A DNA stretch of 62,986 nt, filler included, from Dugesia japonica (lineage: Eukaryota): assembly GCA_001938525.1 (NCBI GenBank). It is 5 parts of 5 records of this genome, joined end to end, with 100 filler letters (N's around TTAATTAATTAA, not from the genome) between each part and the next. Parts side by side here need not be neighbours in the genome. Positions count along the whole stretch, not along the records: positions 52,533 to 62,986 come from MQRL01621425.1; 4 more parts are not named here. One strand, given 5' to 3'. Of this stretch, positions 1 to 61,324 are shown one piece after another. The notes beneath the pieces were generated by a model. That model did not search any database. It was not told where the DNA came from and saw nothing but the letters and a program-made list of their open reading frames with translations. The translations under genes and the position numbers were made by a program. Each line of letters starts with the position of its first letter. Position 1 is the stretch's first letter.

Positions 1-560
1 TTTGAAGAAACAGGCAGTGTTATGTATAGGAAAAAATCAGGATGTCCATCAAAGCAGAATGAACGATATGCTGTCGTCCAGGATGCTTTACAAAACAGTG
101 CATTAGAAATTGGCTTTACTTCTCCTAAAAGAATCTCAAAACAAACATCCCTCACAGCAGTGTATACCACATTCTTCGCAACAAACTGCGGTTATATCCC
201 TACTTATTCATGATACTACAAGAACTAAAATCAACTGATCCTCCCCTCCGACTGCATTTTGCGAAGTGTCTACTCAACAATTAGGAAAGGTTGAATAACA
301 TCTTGTGGAGCGATGAATGCCATTTTTATGTGAATGGTGCCATAAACAAAGAATTTTGTCATCAGGTCTGCGCAAAACCCAAGAGCATACTACACAATCC
401 CTTTGCATTCACAAAAAGTGACGGTATGGATTGGCGTCTCAAAACATTTTACTATTACCCCCTTTATCTACCATGAAACTGTCAATGACAAGTGCTATCT
501 TTCAATCATGAAAGAGCATGTTCTACCGGATTTGAGGAAAAATATTAAATTTTGTTCTGC
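1..560 (+). mobile_element. Tc1/mariner-superfamily transposase relic (frameshifted DDD/E domain fragment)
   Basis: Translated pieces ILWSDECHFYVNGAINK and HSQKVTVWIGVSKHFTITPFIYHETVNDKCYLSIM match the IS630-Tc1-mariner 'FSDEAHF...NKQN' and 'KVTVWCG...IGPYFF' motifs; spread over several frames. Confidence 0.8.
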
Positions 561-52532: not shown

Positions 52533-52762
52533 TAATCTATTCAAGATTTATGTTTATAATAGTAATAATTTTTGAATTAATTTATTTTTATTTAATTTTA
52601 ATTGGTTGATTTTAATTCTTATTCTTATTTTAAATTTAATTATTTAATTTAATTATTGTAAATTATATTTATTTTAAGATTGTCTTCTTTGATTAGTATT
52701 TCTTCATGTTTTTTTCTATGTAGTGTAGAAAAAAAATTTCTATAAAAAATTCTTAAAAATGT

Positions 52763-52798
52763 CAATTCCTGACGAAGACAAATTCGAAATATTGAATC
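52763..52798 (+). ncRNA. Minimal type I hammerhead ribozyme motif (left arm of inverted pair)
   Basis: caattc-CTGACGA-A-gac aaa ttc-GAAA-ta-tt-gaat; core intact, one mismatch in stem II. Confidence 0.65.
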
Positions 52799-53253
52799 TC
52801 AAAATACAAGAAAAAATTTTGATCGAAGCTTTTATTATTTTAAATGAATTAATATATTTTATCTCAATATATTTTGTAACAATATATTTTGTCCGAAATA
52901 TTTTGTCATGGTACCGATCTGTTAAGCAGAGTATATTGTACAGTGTCAGACAACACACGAAGACGCGATGAAAGTGAAATTAAAGAGAAGAATACTAAAG
53001 GAGAACAATAAAATAGTCAAAGCAAGGTTTATAGGCAAACAAGTATCAAGAGATTTGAGGAAGAAAGTATGCTTGAGATGGAGCAAAAAAAATGTTCGTA
53101 ATCATGATCATTTTAATTAACAATTTTAAGGAGCAACATAGATCATGTAATTTATAAATTTCAGTATTTATTCCTCCATAATTTTATAACTTACATCTAT
53201 AATTTAAAATAAAAGCTTCGATCAAAATTTTTTTATTATTTGATATTTGATAA

Positions 53254-53290
53254 CAATTCGATATTTCGACTTAGTCTTCTTCAGGAATTG
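53254..53290 (-). ncRNA. Intact minimal type I hammerhead ribozyme (Penelope type)
   Basis: CAAUUC-CUGAAGA-A-GAC UAA GUC-GAAA-UA-UC-GAAUUG: 6-bp stem I, 3-bp stem II, complete CUGANGA/GAAA core, palindromic AUAU stem III, AUC cleavage triplet. Confidence 0.8.
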
Positions 53291-54170
53291 ACTTTTTTAA
53301 AATTTAAATAAATTTAAATTATACATCTATAATTTCCATATAATTATAAATCAATTCAGAAAAGATGTTTCTTTTAAACGCAAAAAAATAGGAATAATTG
53401 GGAAATCAGATGATATTTACTTATTCGTCAATCATGAAAATATTAATTTTCATGATTCCAAAAAAAATTTTCCCTGGTGGTATATTAATTTGTTCTTATT
53501 TAAATCCTAGAGCAAGGAAGATAGTATAAATTTTAAAAAATTTAAAAGAATTAAGTTACCCAAAAATAAAATATTTGATCGTTTAAAACTTAAAGAAATT
53601 TATCTTTATGAATTCTTGGATTCACATCGAAATATGCCATAAATTAAATAATAACTAAAGAAAAGTTTTATATTTCTCTAACAAGCGAATATATTATGAA
53701 AGATTTAAAACAGGATATAAAATAATGAATTGTTCTAATTTATTGAATTACATTTTNNATATAACATTAAATATGTTTTGATTCTAAATATTGAGTTAAG
53801 TATTATTATTCAATAAATGAATTAGATTCAGTTTATTTCTTTTATTTTTCATCTTTAATTTGGTAATTATGTCTTTAAAGCACGTGAATTACATTAAGAT
53901 TCATGACTAACAATCATTTGAATTCTTTGAGAACGAAATATGTCAAAAATAACAATAAATATATTAATGATAACTTTGATTTATATAAATAGTTCGATTA
54001 ATTAAAATTTAATAATATTCTTCAATGGAAAGTACTTAAAAACCAATTTTTTCCTTTATCTAGANNNNNNNNNNNNNNNNNNNGGAAGTATGACTCAATC
54101 AATACAAAATATGGATTTTCAAATAAAATACTATGTAAATTTATTTAAAGAATATTAAAAAATCAATTAA

Positions 54171-54706
54171 CTTGAAAAGGGCTAAGAATTCCGAACAAAG
54201 TATGTTTAAGTTGATTTAAACTATAAAGATGGAAAAGCTGGCCAAAAGCATTTCAAATATTCATTAGGTTCTATGAAAAAATCAAGTGCTTAGGATAAAA
54301 TAAGCGATTATCAGATATTAAAACTTTGCATTCCCACAAAAATATAACCACATTTTAAATTTTAAACCATTAGGGATTTTACTTAGATATTGTATTGAAA
54401 ATATAATCNNNNNNNNNNNNNNNNNNNNNNNNNNNNNNNNNNNNNNNNNNNNNNNNNNTTGAAAAGGGCTAAGAATTCCGAACAAAGTATGTTTAAGTTG
54501 ATTTAAATTATAAAGATGGAAAAGCTGGCCAAAAGCATTTCAAATATTCATTAGTTTCTATGAAAAAATCAAGTGCTTAGGATAAAATAAGCGATTATCA
54601 GATATTAAAACTTTGCATTCCCAATTTAAAAACACAAAAATATAACCACATTTTAAATTTTAAACCATTAGGGATTTTACTTAGATATTGTATTGAAAAT
54701 ATAATC
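54171..54706. repeat. ~240-bp direct duplication across an N gap (probable assembly overlap / allelic haplotigs)
   Basis: 54172-54408 is repeated at 54459-54706 with a few SNPs and a 10-bp indel. Confidence 0.8.
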
Positions 54707-55867: not shown

Positions 55868-57393
55868 TCTACCCCGAATTTGGTTTCATTATAAAATATT
55901 ATGGTTTCAGGCAGTTTTTTATTGTCTTTTTCAATATTCACTGAGTTATGTTTCGTACTCAGTAGTAGTACTTTTTGCGTTGGCTTTTATATACTGTCAA
56001 AGTGCAATTATCTGTTTTATAAATTTCAGATGAAAATCGAGATAAATTATCTTTTTTTTGGCCAGTTTCGGCTATTCTCTTTTATTTGCACGAATTGTTT
56101 CAACCAACGTAGTCCGTTTTTCCAATAATTTTGATGCCAGTGATTTGCTAGTCAAAAAATTATCAGTGGTTACATTTCTTCCAGCACCGGTAAATTGTTC
56201 AATTAATTTCAGGACGACAAACGCACTCAAAGGAATTGATGACTGTCTTGTTTCGTTCATTCCCAAATACGGAATCCATTTATTATAAATTTATTTTGGA
56301 GATCAGATATCCACAATAATTTTATTCCGAACTTATAAGGTTTGTTCAGCATATACTGCGTAAATCGGCATCTCGCTTTGCTTGGGAATAGTTGTTCGTC
56401 AATTGCTTGACGGTCATTCTCATCGGAAGATGACGACAATCTCAAAAGTCTTCTTGGTCTACTATTCAAGATGTTCTTTTCTTCACTATTACTGTCTGAG
56501 GAAACACACATTTCTTCTTCTGATTGATCCTCTGAAATATCTGCTGGTTCAATTTCAGGATCAAAATCATCTTGGTCGATATCCGAAAGATCTTTTCTTA
56601 TATTTTCATGTCCTCTAAAATTCTAGGTATTTTCGCACGTCTCGGCATTTTTAGGGTAAAGTTTCAAAACTGGATAAAAAAATTCTAAATATATTTTCAC
56701 TTATTATAATAAAAATATTCACACTTAATTTACATTGCAAGCTACAATAATTGTAAATTGAAAGAAATATATTCAATTGTCCACAATATTGTAAGTATTT
56801 CAACTTCCCTTATTTAAACCGTATACAACAACTGTCAATGACAAAAACTGATATGAAAACAATAACTAGAAAATGACTGAATACTGTACTGAGTGAGTAG
56901 TGTATTTCAACTGTAAGCGACAATTACCAATAAGAAAATAAAAATGCATTAAAAAACATTACAAAATTCTGAAAATTTTGGAAAACCCAGTGATTTCAAA
57001 ACAGTAGTTTTTCCNNNNNNNNNNNNNNNNNNNNNNNNNNNNNNNNNNNNNNNNNNNNNNNNNNNNNNNNNNNNNNNNNNNNNNNNNNNNNNNNNNNNNN
57101 NNNNNNNNNNNNNNNNNNNNNNNNNNNNNNNNNNNNNNNNNNNNTATCAAAAAAATGGAAGTGGAAAATCAAAATAATTTATAATATTATTAAATACACC
57201 AATACCTCACTTTGCGTTGCAGATAGGTTCCAAAAAAACACGACGCAAAGTGAAACAACACAAAGTGAGGTATTAGTGTACATGAATTTAGAAAAAGTCA
57301 TAACATTATTTAAAATATTAAATAAAATTTCAAGACAAAATCTTGTGAACAATTGATACAACCGGTCATTTTGACCGGTCGATAGTTCTAGTG
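55868..57393 (-). mobile_element. Second piggyBac family relic (internally deleted) with one intact end
   Basis: AIDEQLFPSKARCRFTQYMLNKPYKFGIK, VTTDNFLTS, FYNETKFGV; terminus TTAA-CACTAGAACTATCGACCGGTCAAAATGACCGGT (57397-57361). Confidence 0.85.
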
Positions 57394-58399: not shown

Positions 58400-59520
58400 T
58401 TATAGTTTCATAATGGCCATAGGCCAAACTGTTATTCTTTTTACTCCAAAACCGCTTGTCATCTAAACATGACAACACGCGTTTTTGCTCTCGATTGTGA
58501 ATATCTGGTGATTAATTGATCAAAAGCTTGATTGTCCAACACTCTTGGATTCTCCTCCGTTATATACATCTAGATAATTTTGATGTTGAATATCGTTTTG
58601 GTTCAAGTTTATACCTTTCGTTTTCATTGATTTTGTGTTATCTTTTTTCTTCATGCTGTAATATTTCGGTCTTATCAACTCAGAATATTCTTCTCCTTGA
58701 CCTTCATCTTTGAATAGACCGATCTTGTTGACCACTTTACCGATCTTTTTGATAATAAAAATCTTTTGATAATAATTATCCAGCAGACAATCCGATTTCA
58801 TTTCTGACAAAAGCCGGTTTTTGTCTACTCCAGTGCATGAGAGAAAAAAGCTGTCTGTATAATCAGCAATAACATCAATTCTACAATTGAACCGCTGGCG
58901 ATATGAATCTAATTCTTCACATTGCAGTTGATACATTTTTAAATTACTGAGATCCAACACCACTTGACCGATATAACTAGGTCTATCTAGACATATACTA
59001 TATTTATCCAACAAGACAGCTTTCAGGGCCTCTGCGACATCCAACGTTTCCTTAAATGTTATTTTACTTGTATGTTACAAATTTTTTTATCATTATTGCA
59101 AAACCTCAGATTCGTGCGCTTCTTCAAATTTTCCACCGTTTTGCCATAGATCGCATTGTTTAATAACTTAAAAACAATTTTCTCAAACTTTTTACTTAAT
59201 GCTGCTTTCCTTGCTGAATTGGTTTGAATATAATTTGCAAAGATTTCCGATTCTTAAAATTTGACTATTCCATGAACAGCAGTTACATGAGCTCCCAATT
59301 TTACCTACAAATCTAAAAATTTCTATTATACAAGGTAATGACGTTTCGGTTCATCTGTCATTAGTAGCTTCTTTACTTTTGATTCTGGTGGGCACTTATG
59401 TTCTGGAGCCAATGGTAATTGATCTAGCCTATCATGATGTTCGATAGATATTTCAAAATCAACTTCTAATAAATATCCAATATCATTAATACTGTCACCT
59501 GACAAATTGTTCTCATACAT
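58400..59520 (-). mobile_element. Polinton/Maverick-type DNA polymerase B relic (palm to C-terminus)
   Basis: GYLLEVD...HDRLDQLPLAPE, KLLNNAIYGKTVEN, YIGQVVLDLS, YTDSFF, IGLFKDE, LSCLDDKRF. Confidence 0.85.
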
Positions 59521-60129: not shown

Positions 60130-61324
60130 CAAATATTCCTGATGATGCCGTAATCGGGTTAATTGTTATAACTTTTAAAGTTAAGCAATCGCCGGAAGTC
60201 TGAATTATTTTAACTACACTTTCATGAGACATTTCATGTACATCAATACCGTTTACCTACAATAACATAAAAAAATATTTTTGATTTTTAGTATCTAACT
60301 TCCAACAAATAATCTCCTATTAATAACCCAGCTTGAAAAGCAGGGCTGTTTTCTGCAATACACTCAAAATATTGAGAAGCTGAACCATGTGCTTTAGATA
60401 TAATCTCAGATTCATCTACAATTAACAAAAAATTAAAAATGCATAATAAAAATAATAAAATTACTTTTGAAACCTTTGATAACAAATCCGAAACCGCAAG
60501 ATCCTTTTTGTAAAATTGCCATTCTAGGAATATTTTCAAGCTTATGACTCCTTAAATAAATAATTTATTTGAAATATGTCCAATATTAATAAAAAATTAC
60601 ATTACTAAAGCTATTGGAGTTCTAGCTTTAACATCTGATTTTATATTGAAAGCTAAATTTTGAAATATATAATAACATATATCATAAATAATGCTTAAGT
60701 ATAAATTTAGTAATTTATAAAAAGAAAAGTTATTAAACAATTTTGAATACATGAAGTTGATTCTGACTTCATGGAAACATTAGTAAAATGTTGTAGAAAT
60801 TGTCTATCAGCTGATTGAGAAATGTACGTGGTAGCTTTACTTATATCTGATGAATTTGTATTATCATCACCTCTTGAATTGATGCTTTGACTTTTAGAGT
60901 CCAAATATCTACCATCGTCAATTTGATCATCTAATTTACTAGAACTCGAAAATCTCTTTGATAAAGGAAATATGCTTCTTCTTTTATCATTGAACTTTGG
61001 TAAGGTGGTAACAGGAACTTTATTATTTTAATAAATACTCATTTTAAAAATAAAAACCATACCGACGTCTTCATCTTTAAAATTTTGAATTAAGTCTGCA
61101 ATTTCTAAATTATTTGACAATAAAGCTGTTTGATAAGCTGATTTGTTTTCGAAATCTAGAGCGTGCCGAGTGATACCTCTATAAAGAAGTAATCTGGCAC
61201 AGGAGCCTTGATTATGCAGAGCACATATATGCAATGCAGTACTACCCTTATTTGTTTTGGAATCTATATCAGCACCATAAGTTAAAAGATGATCTAAATG
61301 ATTTGTTCTGCCATATAGACATGC
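60130..61324 (-). CDS. SHANK: Shank/Prosap scaffold protein, internal exons: 61324-61063, 61017-~60750, 60652-60601, 60550-60465, 60415-60300, 60256-60130
   Basis: ACLYGRTNHLDHLLTYGAD...GSTALHICALHNQGSCARLLLYRG...DV/VP matches the Shank ankyrin repeats. PDZ: AILQKGSCGFGFVIKG / QYFECIAENSPAFQAGLLIGDYLLE / VNGIDV...HESVVKII...LKVI. Introns are GT-AG with compatible phases. Confidence 0.88.

What the first reader, a model, noticed from the sequence alone, without database searches (positions are those of the whole stretch)
53254..53290. Structurally perfect minimal hammerhead ribozyme hidden in non-coding AT-rich DNA
Seen: the minus strand reads CAAUUC CUGAAGA A GAC-UAA-GUC GAAA UA UC GAAUUG. 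That gives a 6-bp stem I, the full catalytic core, an extra A before stem II, a 3-bp stem II, a palindromic AUAU stem III and an AUC cleavage site. Known: Penelope-like elements carry minimal type I hammerheads that are thought to cleave as dimers through the palindromic stem III. Inference: this copy may still self-cleave. No Penelope ORF is nearby, so it may belong to a non-autonomous ribozyme-bearing element. It is on the same strand and scaffold as Shank, so it could be transcribed in a Shank intron or 3' region.
Basis: partly seen in the sequence, partly recalled or inferred. Interest (0 to 1): 0.75.

Follow-up and report, generated by a model that had tools for sequence, protein, structure and literature searches.

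The report
Solo hammerhead ribozyme repeat copy
The 37-base motif is a real minimal hammerhead ribozyme sequence, but it is one stranded copy of a very abundant short mobile repeat of a kind already known from animal genomes, and this copy shows no sign of being transcribed or cutting itself.

Summary
The minus strand 53290→53254 reads CAAUUC-CUGAAGA-A-GAC/UAA/GUC-GAAA-UAU-C-GAAUUG, with every hammerhead core base in place. A composition-matched 20-Mb random control gave no such motif.

It is not an isolated motif. It lies at the 5' end of a ~100-nt unit (53305→53206). That unit is flanked by 28-nt direct repeats, a likely target-site duplication (p≈0.001). A degenerate inverted copy lies 460 nt away at 52748-52850.

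Reads of the same organism show the unit is hugely repeated. Summed contig depth is 4-7×10^5 on the unit against ~10-20 in the unique flanks. Inside the ribozyme the family varies only at N7, two loop-2 bases and H17, the positions a hammerhead leaves free.

Three hallmarks match the published minimal hammerheads of Penelope-like elements: an extra base between positions 9 and 10.1, the G10.1-C11.1 pair, and a palindromic helix III. Helix II differs, at 3 bp rather than 6-8.

There is no RT or GIY-YIG ORF in the piece, no same-strand partner for the required dimer, no RNA reads on the unique flanks, and no read ends at the cleavage site.

Verdict: a genuine but ordinary relic copy of a known kind of ribozyme-bearing non-autonomous retroelement, probably inert at this locus.

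The parts
53254..53290 (-). Minimal type I hammerhead motif (right copy). Stem I is 53285-53290 with 53254-53259. The core CUGAAGA is 53278-53284 and the extra A is 53277. Helix II GAC-UAA-GUC is 53268-53276 and GAAA is 53264-53267. The palindrome AUAU is 53261-53264 and C17 is 53260. The predicted cut lies between 53260 and 53259.
   Evidence: Sequence. Single descriptor hit in the piece. No hit in 20 Mb of random sequence. The minimum-free-energy structure is the hammerhead secondary structure.
53206..53305 (-). The ~100-nt repeat unit that carries the hammerhead at its 5' end. It is followed by a variable A-rich spacer and a conserved block. Here it is a solo insertion.
   Evidence: Homology to the left copy (I1/I3, 19, 42). 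Summed contig depth is 4.4-7.1e5 on the unit against 9-30 in the flanks, and the loose ends on both sides have low-agreement consensus.
53208..53233 (-). Conserved 26-nt block AAAAAATTTTGATCGAAGCTTTTATT downstream of the ribozyme. It is identical in both local copies.
   Evidence: I3, 100% complementary. Few family variants fall there.
53178..53205 (.). Left member of the 28-nt direct repeat flanking the right unit (putative target-site duplication).
   Evidence: D11 (23 of 28 identical). The placement test gives p about 0.001. The sequence is near-unique by read depth.
53308..53335 (.). Right member of the 28-nt direct repeat (putative target-site duplication).
52748..52850 (+). Second copy of the unit, in inverted orientation relative to the first (convergent, about 79-86% identical).
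   Evidence: Summed depth is 1-4.7e5.
52763..52799 (+). Degenerate hammerhead of the left copy: CAATTC CTGACGA A GAC AAA TTC GAAA TAT T GAATCT. The helix II closing pair is broken by G11.3 to U, a change private to this copy. Stem I is reduced to 4 bp.
   Evidence: At 52783, 95% of family depth reads G.

Best explanation
The motif is a genuine, sequence-intact minimal type I hammerhead ribozyme (min-HHR). It sits at the 5' end of a ~100-nt non-autonomous repeat unit that is extremely abundant in this genome. By architecture the ribozyme belongs with the min-HHRs described in Penelope-like elements (PLEs) and their non-autonomous derivatives. This copy (53206-53305, minus strand) is a solo insertion with a ~28-bp target-site duplication. 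It lies about 7 kb downstream of Shank ANK/PDZ exons on the same strand.

Inferred mechanism for the family: the ribozyme cannot close helix III alone, because A15.1-U16.1 would enclose only two bases. It becomes active only when two sense copies swap strands. That forms a 4-bp AUAU/AUAU helix III and intermolecular stems I, with cleavage after C17. This would process multimeric or paired element transcripts during PLE-type retrotransposition.

At this locus that cannot happen in cis. The only neighbour is an inverted, degenerate copy 460 nt away, so a read-through transcript would fold into a ~90-bp imperfect hairpin. This copy is therefore most likely an inert relic.

What is shown: the motif, the repeat family, the selective pattern of variation, the target-site duplication, the absence of an ORF, and the absence of locus-specific RNA. 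What is inferred: the PLE relationship, the dimer mechanism and the inactivity.
For: The motif and all 11 invariant core bases are present. There is one hit in the piece and none in 20 Mb of composition-matched random sequence.

Three descriptor-independent hallmarks listed by Cervera & de la Pena 2014 (PMC4209133) are met: an unpaired base between A9 and G10.1, the G10.1-C11.1 pair, and palindromic 15.2-16.2. The same paper reports pairs of min-HHRs on opposite strands 100-700 bp apart, as seen here (I1/I3).

Family size: 14,831 DNA contigs of the same organism lay on the stretch. Summed depth is 4.4-7.1e5 on the unit against ~9-30 on the unique flanks.

Family variation at 10% or more within the 37 nt falls only at free positions. 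These are N7 (53280, 49%), L2.1 (53273, 80%), L2.3 (53271, 54%; 52782, 45%) and H17 (52793, 49%). The adjacent spacer has about nine variable sites in 20 nt. The chance of four of four variable sites landing in the eight free positions is 0.001. The helix II break in the left copy is private, since the family reads G at 95%.

The 28-nt flanking direct repeat has p~0.001. Many contigs show head-to-head inverted junctions, with the forward copy starting at a fixed point 0-11 nt before stem I and the inverted copy cut at varying points (tables 5 and 5c). This resembles the PLE insertion architecture described by Craig et al. 2021 (PMC8557442).

An independent metagenomic repeat (L008/L028) has the same A-GAC-NNN-GUC helix II with a different stem I and a palindromic ACCGGU helix III. 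Retrozyme families with consensus units of 51-972 bp and dispersed monomers are reported in bioRxiv 10.64898/2026.07.22.740005.
Against: No Rfam hammerhead model reaches threshold, and the fold energy is unremarkable (z -0.98). Helix II is 3 bp with a 3-nt loop, whereas published metazoan PLE min-HHRs usually have 6-8 bp.

No PLE ORF carrying this unit could be examined, because no further genome of this organism was reachable. The PLE link therefore rests on architecture only. No compensatory covariation was seen within the family, only conservation, which recent amplification from a few master copies could also produce.

The unit boundaries do not coincide with the cleavage site. No head-to-tail tandem junctions were among the best-supported joints, so how dimers would form in vivo is unclear. 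The calculated double-hammerhead dimer (-4.8 kcal/mol) is far less stable than an extended duplex (-18.2). The depth ratio is not a true copy number, as the tool itself cautions.
Confidence: 0.8

Rival explanations
1. The copy is still catalytically competent. It self-cleaves in Shank pre-mRNA or 3' transcripts by pairing in trans with transcripts of other family copies.
For: Core and stems are intact and close to the family consensus. The motif is on the same strand as the Shank exons. Family RNA is present in poly(A)+ libraries on both strands, so trans partners exist.
Against: There are zero RNA reads on the unique flanks 52912-53184 and 53341-53756 in X21 and X22. No site has a fifth or more of molecules beginning or ending there, and family reads run across the cleavage site into the spacer. 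The active dimer is thermodynamically disfavoured. Published PLE min-HHRs cleave poorly even as dimers in vitro. Helix II is only 3 bp.
Confidence: 0.08
2. The hammerhead match is fortuitous. The ~100-nt unit would be the terminal inverted repeat or end of an AT-rich DNA transposon, MITE or foldback family, and the 'ribozyme' would have no RNA function.
For: The two local copies are arranged like terminal inverted repeats with a shared outer terminus. Inverted junctions are common genome-wide. There is no Rfam hit and no unusual folding energy. Stems show conservation but no covariation.
Against: The interior between the two copies is single-copy (depth ~9-18), so the 560-bp structure is not itself a mobile unit. 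A 28-bp target-site duplication is unlike the duplications of DNA transposons, which from my own knowledge are about 2-10 bp. The chance expectation of the motif is ~8e-10 per bp. Family polymorphism avoids every core and stem position and hits exactly N7, loop 2 and H17 (p~0.001). The extra base, G10.1-C11.1 and the palindrome are independent hallmarks.
Confidence: 0.08
3. The unit is the severely truncated end or pseudo-LTR of an autonomous Penelope-like element, not a separate non-autonomous family.
For: PLE min-HHRs lie in pLTRs, and most genomic min-HHRs are solo motifs thought to come from truncated PLEs. An inverted truncated copy adjacent to a forward copy is typical of PLE insertions. 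In RNA reads some copies continue downstream of the unit with a consistent sequence (loose ends at 53202 and 52850).
Against: Most DNA contigs end with low-agreement flanks on both sides of the ~100-nt unit (agreement 0.47-0.53). That implies a short unit with two defined ends. 5' truncation would give variable upstream ends, but the upstream end is the fixed one. No RT or GIY-YIG remnant is in the piece.
Confidence: 0.3

Closest known systems
Minimal hammerheads (min-HHR) of metazoan Penelope-like elements (Cervera & de la Pena 2014, PMC4209133)
   Same: Type I topology with open stem I and no loop 1. An unpaired base lies between A9 and G10.1, and the G10.1-C11.1 pair is present. Helix III is reduced to a palindrome that can pair only in a dimer. 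There are thousands of mostly solo copies per genome, and occasional opposite-strand pairs 100-700 bp apart.
   Different: Helix II is only 3 bp with a 3-nt loop, whereas 6-8 bp is usual in PLE min-HHRs. No PLE ORF or pLTR context could be shown. The unit is very short (~100 nt), with the ribozyme at its very 5' end.
Metazoan non-LTR retrozymes and their dispersed monomers (Cervera & de la Pena 2020, PMC7229834; Li et al. 2026 preprint, 10.64898/2026.07.22.740005)
   Same: A short AT-rich non-coding repeat carrying a type I hammerhead. It is non-autonomous and abundant, with target-site duplications larger than 4 bp. Monomer copies are scattered through introns and intergenic DNA. The unit length is within the reported 51-972 bp range.
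   Different: Retrozymes are defined by head-to-tail tandem arrays, and by canonical hammerheads with loop 1-loop 2 contacts that cleave efficiently. Here no tandem array is present, no head-to-tail junctions were seen, and the ribozyme is of the minimal kind.
RAGATH-1 hammerhead (Rfam RF03152)
   Same: It is the best Rfam alignment. The spacing CUGAnG-(a)-AGACnnnGnC-GAAA is the same, with a very short stem II.
   Different: The score of 15.6 bits is far below the 56.3 gathering score. RAGATH-1 has an upstream hairpin and a long stem III, both absent here, so this is not a member.
CChMVd (+) hammerhead with an extra A between A9 and G10.1 (De la Pena & Flores 2001, cited in PMC4209133)
   Same: It tolerates an extra nucleotide at the same core position.
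   Different: It is a type III viroid ribozyme with full-length helices and is unrelated in sequence and context.

Membership tests
Hammerhead ribozyme, type I | Invariant core: C3 U4 G5 A6 N7 G8 A9, G12 A13 A14, A15.1-U16.1, H17 | tested here: met
   All are present at 53284-53278, 53267-53264, 53261 and 53260. No family variant of 10% or more falls at any of them.
Hammerhead ribozyme, type I | Helices I and II flank the core, with the 5' and 3' ends in helix I | tested here: met
   Helix I is 6 Watson-Crick bp and helix II is 3 bp. The minimum-free-energy structure of the 37-mer is exactly this fold.
Hammerhead ribozyme, type I | Helix III closing the three-way junction | tested here: inconclusive
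   Only A15.1-U16.1 around two bases, which cannot form in a monomer. A 4-bp AUAU/AUAU helix is possible in a dimer, but the computed double-hammerhead (-4.8 kcal/mol) loses to an extended duplex (-18.2).
Hammerhead ribozyme, type I | Match to a curated Rfam hammerhead covariance model at its gathering score | tested here: not met
   No hammerhead hit at E<=10 on the 10-kb piece. On 251 nt the only hit is RF03152 at 15.6 bits against 56.3. The clear min-HHR in L028 also fails, at 20.5 bits, so the models are insensitive to this class.
Hammerhead ribozyme, type I | Site-specific self-cleavage after H17 | not testable with these tools
   RNA-seq gives only indirect data. There is no pile of read ends at 53259/53260, and family reads cross the site.
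PLE-type minimal hammerhead (min-HHR) | [quoted passage not shown] | tested here: met
   A at 53277. It is also present in the left copy (52776) and is invariant in the family.
PLE-type minimal hammerhead (min-HHR) | Conserved G10.1-C11.1 pair | tested here: met
   G at 53276 pairs with C at 53268.
PLE-type minimal hammerhead (min-HHR) | Palindromic 15.2-16.2 / loop 3 | tested here: met
   AUAU at 53264-53261.
PLE-type minimal hammerhead (min-HHR) | Large genomic families with covariation and compensatory changes | tested here: inconclusive
   The family is very large, and variation is confined to N7, loop 2 and H17. Only per-site frequencies were available, so linked compensatory changes could not be scored.
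PLE-type minimal hammerhead (min-HHR) | Long helix II (6-8 bp), as in most metazoan PLE min-HHRs | tested here: not met
   Helix II is 3 bp with a 3-nt loop.
PLE-type minimal hammerhead (min-HHR) | Location in the pseudo-LTR of an element encoding RT and GIY-YIG endonuclease | tested here: not met
   No such ORF is in the piece. The longest ORFs hit only piggyBac transposase, PDZ and ANK.
Metazoan non-LTR retrozyme | Head-to-tail tandem repeats of the ribozyme-bearing unit | tested here: not met
   No tandem array is at the locus. The two local copies are inverted. The best-supported genome-wide junctions are head-to-head or tail-to-tail, not head-to-tail.
Metazoan non-LTR retrozyme | Canonical type I hammerhead with loop 1-loop 2 tertiary contacts | tested here: not met
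   There is no loop 1, and loop 2 is 3 nt.
Metazoan non-LTR retrozyme | Expression as small circular RNAs | not testable with these tools
   Only poly(A)/cDNA short reads were available. No back-splice-like head-to-tail joints were listed.

The most novel reading that the evidence does not exclude
The ~100-nt unit may be a distinct, ultra-compact class of ribozyme-first non-autonomous retroelement. The hammerhead has only a 3-bp helix II and sits at the extreme 5' end. The unit appears to insert with ~28-bp target-site duplications and typically forms head-to-head inverted pairs rather than tandem arrays. It has expanded to tens of thousands of copies in what appears to be a small, very AT-rich animal genome. 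On this reading the ribozyme, or its hairpin-forming inverted pairs, would work differently from the circular-RNA retrozyme cycle.
Probability: 0.15. Interest if true: 0.5.

Novelty: new member of a known kind. Interest (0 to 1): 0.27.

Why it matters
Minimal hammerheads are already known to occur by the thousands in animal genomes, in Penelope-like elements and their non-autonomous derivatives. One more solo copy therefore changes little.

What is mildly useful:
- The family behind it is extremely abundant, and its pattern of variation is what a hammerhead under constraint would show.
- Its helix II is unusually short, and its insertions have long target-site duplications and inverted junctions.

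These features make it a convenient family for testing how PLE-type min-HHRs are used. For Shank biology there is no sign of any effect.

Tried and rejected
- Rfam, both on the whole piece and on a 251-nt window with permissive filters, gave no usable hammerhead hit. The same failure on a clear min-HHR from L028 shows the models are insensitive to this class. It is not evidence that the motif is false.
- Folding energy gave no signal (z -0.98).
- An exact family pattern scanned in metagenome contigs gave 0 hits. A looser 17-base core plus helix II pattern gave 120 metagenome and 22 viral loci. Almost all are chance strings in unrelated, often GC-rich contigs. Only L008 and L028 carry a full motif, and because I picked them by stem I they cannot count as independent covariation.
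- I looked for further copies of the unit in the piece by sensitive blastn and found none beyond the two.
- I looked for a target-site duplication around the left copy and found none. It is embedded in other repeats.
- I searched the paper library, and the supplements of PMC4209133, for the helix II string. There were no hits and no supplements are held.
- The MITE/TIR reading of the 560-bp inverted structure is rejected because its interior is single-copy.
I therefore could not fetch more of this genome to extract full family copies or a PLE ORF.
I repeated it on 52600-53756.

Full report
**1. The observation**

On the minus strand, 53290→53254 reads CAAUUC CUGAAGA A GAC UAA GUC GAAA UAU C GAAUUG. 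In standard hammerhead numbering:
- Stem I has 6 Watson-Crick pairs (53290-53285 with 53259-53254).
- C3-A9 is CUGAAGA, with N7 = A.
- One unpaired A (53277) follows.
- Helix II is G10.1-A-C / G-U-C11.1 around a UAA loop.
- G12 A13 A14 follow.
- A15.1-U15.2-A16.2-U16.1 forms the palindrome AUAU.

I wrote a descriptor for minimal type I hammerheads: stem I of at least 4-6 bp, CUGANGA, 0-1 extra base, helix II of 3-8 bp, GAAA, a palindromic helix III and UH. It finds exactly this site in the 10,454-base piece. It finds nothing in 20 Mb of first-order Markov sequence with the piece's dinucleotide content. My hand estimate is about 8e-10 per base pair. The motif is therefore far beyond chance for one window, although a handful of chance hits would be expected over a scan of many gigabases.

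Thermodynamics adds nothing. The 37-mer's minimum-free-energy structure is the expected stem I plus stem II fold (-4.6 kcal/mol), but 30 of 200 shuffles fold as well (z -0.98).

Rfam has no hit at E≤10 on the piece. On 251 nt it gives only a sub-threshold alignment to the short-stem-II RAGATH-1 hammerhead (15.6 bits against a gathering score of 56.3).

**2. The motif is part of a repeat unit**

A second copy lies in inverted orientation at 52748-52850 on the plus strand (I1 and I3; alignments; 79-86% identity). The shared unit is about 100 nt long and has these parts:
- about 10 nt of A-rich leader;
- the 37-nt hammerhead;
- a variable A-rich spacer of about 15-30 nt;
- a 26-nt block, AAAAAATTTTGATCGAAGCTTTTATT, identical in both copies;
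- a short tail, TTTTAAAT.

The left hammerhead (52763-52799) is degenerate. G11.3→U breaks the closing pair of helix II, stem I is down to 4 bp, N7 is C and H17 is U.

The right unit (53206-53305) is bracketed by 28-nt direct repeats, 53178-53205 and 53308-53335, with 23 of 28 bases identical (D11). Of 16,638 random placements of a 102-nt segment in the piece, only 16 had flanks that similar (p≈0.001). I read this as a long target-site duplication of an old insertion. No such duplication is visible around the left copy, which is embedded among other repeats.

**3. The family in the genome**

Twenty public runs of one (coded) organism hold the stretch or a part of it. I laid two contig sets and two raw RNA-seq runs on 52600-53756.
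- From the best DNA holder, 14,831 contigs lay on the stretch.
- Summed contig depth is 4.4-7.1×10^5 over the right unit and 4.7×10^5 over the left hammerhead.
- The single-copy stretches 52912-53184 and 53341-53756 have depth of about 9-30.
- The tool warns that this is not a copy number. Even so, the four to five orders of magnitude of contrast, together with two copies in 10 kb, argue for at least 10^4 copies.
- On both sides of the unit the loose-end consensus of DNA contigs has low agreement (0.47-0.53). The unit therefore has two real ends. In RNA reads one subfamily continues downstream with a consistent sequence.

**4. Pattern of variation**

Within the 37-nt ribozyme, the only sites where 10% or more of DNA depth differs are:
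- 53280, which is N7, A/C at 49%. A loose-end copy has U here.
- 53273, which is L2.1, with 80% A.
- 53271 and 52782, which are L2.3, with A/G at 54% and 45%.
- 52793, which is H17, with U/C at 49%.

At 52783, 95% of family depth reads G. This restores the C10.3-G11.3 pair that the left copy has lost.

No core base and no helix II base varies. By contrast, the roughly 20-nt spacer just downstream has about nine variable sites and an indel. If four polymorphic sites fell at random among 37 positions, the chance that all hit the eight free positions (N7, the extra base, loop 2, the two inner palindrome bases and H17) is 0.001.

This is what purifying selection on a hammerhead would give. It is conservation, not compensatory covariation, because only per-site frequencies were available and not linked haplotypes. 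In RNA reads, two minor stem I variants (53289 and 53254, 10-20%) show no visible partner change.

**5. Comparison with what is known**

Cervera and de la Peña (2014, PMC4209133) described min-HHRs in the pseudo-LTRs of Penelope-like elements and, mostly as solo motifs, by the thousands across metazoan genomes. They listed features that were not in their descriptor and that argue against chance:
- families within a genome;
- the G10.1-C11.1 pair;
- palindromic 15.2-16.2.

All four are seen here. They also report pairs of min-HHRs 100-700 bp apart on opposite strands, which is this locus's arrangement.

One difference stands out. Their metazoan motifs usually have a helix II of 6-8 bp, whereas this one has 3 bp and a 3-nt loop.

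A metagenome scan with the 17 specified bases of core plus helix II returned 142 loci, almost all chance strings. Two loci from one project (L008 and L028) carry a complete min-HHR with the same A-GAC-NNN-GUC helix II. Their stem I is different (ACACA/UGUGU) and their palindrome is ACCGGU. The homology between the two loci begins at the ribozyme. The short-helix-II form therefore recurs elsewhere. Because I picked these loci by their stem I, they are not an independent covariation test.

Craig et al. (2021, PMC8557442) describe PLE insertions as often having an inverted, 5'-truncated copy abutting the forward copy. Many contigs (tables 5 and 5c) show exactly such head-to-head junctions. The forward copy starts at a fixed point 0-11 nt before stem I, and the inverted copy is cut at varying points. 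No head-to-tail junction was among the best-supported ones.

The 2026 preprint by Li et al. (10.64898/2026.07.22.740005) reports retrozyme families related to PLE pseudo-LTRs, with consensus lengths of 51-972 bp and dispersed monomers. A ~100-nt unit is therefore not unprecedented.

**6. Context and expression**

No ORF in the piece resembles a reverse transcriptase or GIY-YIG endonuclease. The ORFs that hit anything are piggyBac-type transposase fragments (56072-56511), a PDZ-like exon (60288-60539) and an ankyrin exon (61028-61234), all on the minus strand. The ankyrin exon matches Shank3 residues 286-343 at E 3e-14. The ribozyme is thus on the Shank strand, about 7 kb downstream of the PDZ-like exon. 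I cannot tell whether that is intron or 3' flank.

In the two raw RNA-seq runs the unique flanks of this copy have zero reads. The 778 and 21 reads that lie on the units nearly all run on into unlike sequence (97-100%), so they come from other copies. In the paired oligo-dT run, both units show roughly a 2:1 excess of one read orientation, and the direction is the same relative to the ribozyme in both. I do not lean on this, because the library's strandedness is not on record.

No position qualifies as a place where many molecules begin or end. Reads cross 53260/53259 into the family's spacer. There is therefore no sign of efficient cleavage in poly(A)+ RNA. Standard libraries may under-sample cleaved ends.

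**7. How it most likely works**

For the family (inferred): the monomer cannot close helix III. Two sense copies must swap strands to form a 4-bp AUAU/AUAU helix III and intermolecular stems I. This is the double-hammerhead model cited. Published PLE min-HHRs cleave only weakly even then. My calculation puts the double-hammerhead dimer at -4.8 kcal/mol, against -18.2 for a simple extended duplex. Cofactors or co-transcriptional folding would therefore be needed.

For this copy: there is no sense partner nearby. A transcript through both local copies folds the two units onto each other in a long imperfect hairpin. I therefore rate self-cleavage at this locus as unlikely (about 0.1) and the copy as an inert relic. 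I rate the identification as a hammerhead-derived element of the PLE/retrozyme kind at about 0.8.

**8. Limits**

As a result, the PLE parentage, true copy number, full-length structure of the family and linked covariation remain untested. N runs were left untouched.

Noticed in passing
window 52639-52731 and 52851-52905: Two further high-copy repeats flank the left unit. The first has summed depth up to 4.9e5, and in other copies it continues after 52731 as TGTAGCCTGTTCCTAGTGTTTTCCATGTAA. The second is 2.8 copies of the 15-mer AATATATTTTGTAAC, which is also repeated genome-wide. I did not resolve whether either belongs to the same element family.
   Followed up: partly
window 54172-54706: A ~290-nt direct duplication, 99-100% identical (54172-54408 against 54459-54706), straddles a run of 50 N (54409-54458). 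It looks like an assembly artefact at a gap rather than biology.
   Followed up: no
window 56072-56511 (minus): Two adjacent ORF fragments of a piggyBac-type transposase (PF13843, E 1e-8 and 9e-7). This is a decayed DNA transposon between the Shank exons and the ribozyme.
   Followed up: partly
window 58520-59520 (minus): A 174-aa ORF and a 64-aa ORF in the GC-richest part of the piece have no Pfam or PDB match. From memory they resemble family-B DNA polymerase debris of large DNA transposons (YTDS-like motif). This was not tested.
   Followed up: partly
window 57195-57280: A hairpin with 25-nt arms (92% paired) and a 36-nt loop gives weak sub-threshold miRNA-model hits (mir-2013 at 25.7 bits, E 0.096). 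It lies beside an N run.
   Followed up: no
window 60288-61234 (minus): Shank exons are inside this piece. The ankyrin exon 61028-61234 matches Shank3 residues 286-343 (E 3e-14), and a PDZ-like exon lies at 60288-60539 (weak PF17820 hit).
   Followed up: partly
L028 2853-2895 (minus) and L008 ~40-80 (minus): Metagenome contigs of one project (GC ~0.4) carry a complete minimal hammerhead: ACACA CUGAGGA A GAC AUA GUC GAAA CCGG U C UGUGU. The repeat homology between the two loci starts at the ribozyme. There is no ORF of 150 aa or more on either contig.
   Followed up: partly
window 53208-53233 plus family continuation (loose ends): The conserved block contains TTGATCG. In the longer RNA-expressed subfamily this is followed about 30 nt later by its complement CGATCAA. 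A conserved hairpin downstream of the ribozyme is therefore possible in full-length members. It was not tested because those copies could not be fetched.
   Followed up: no
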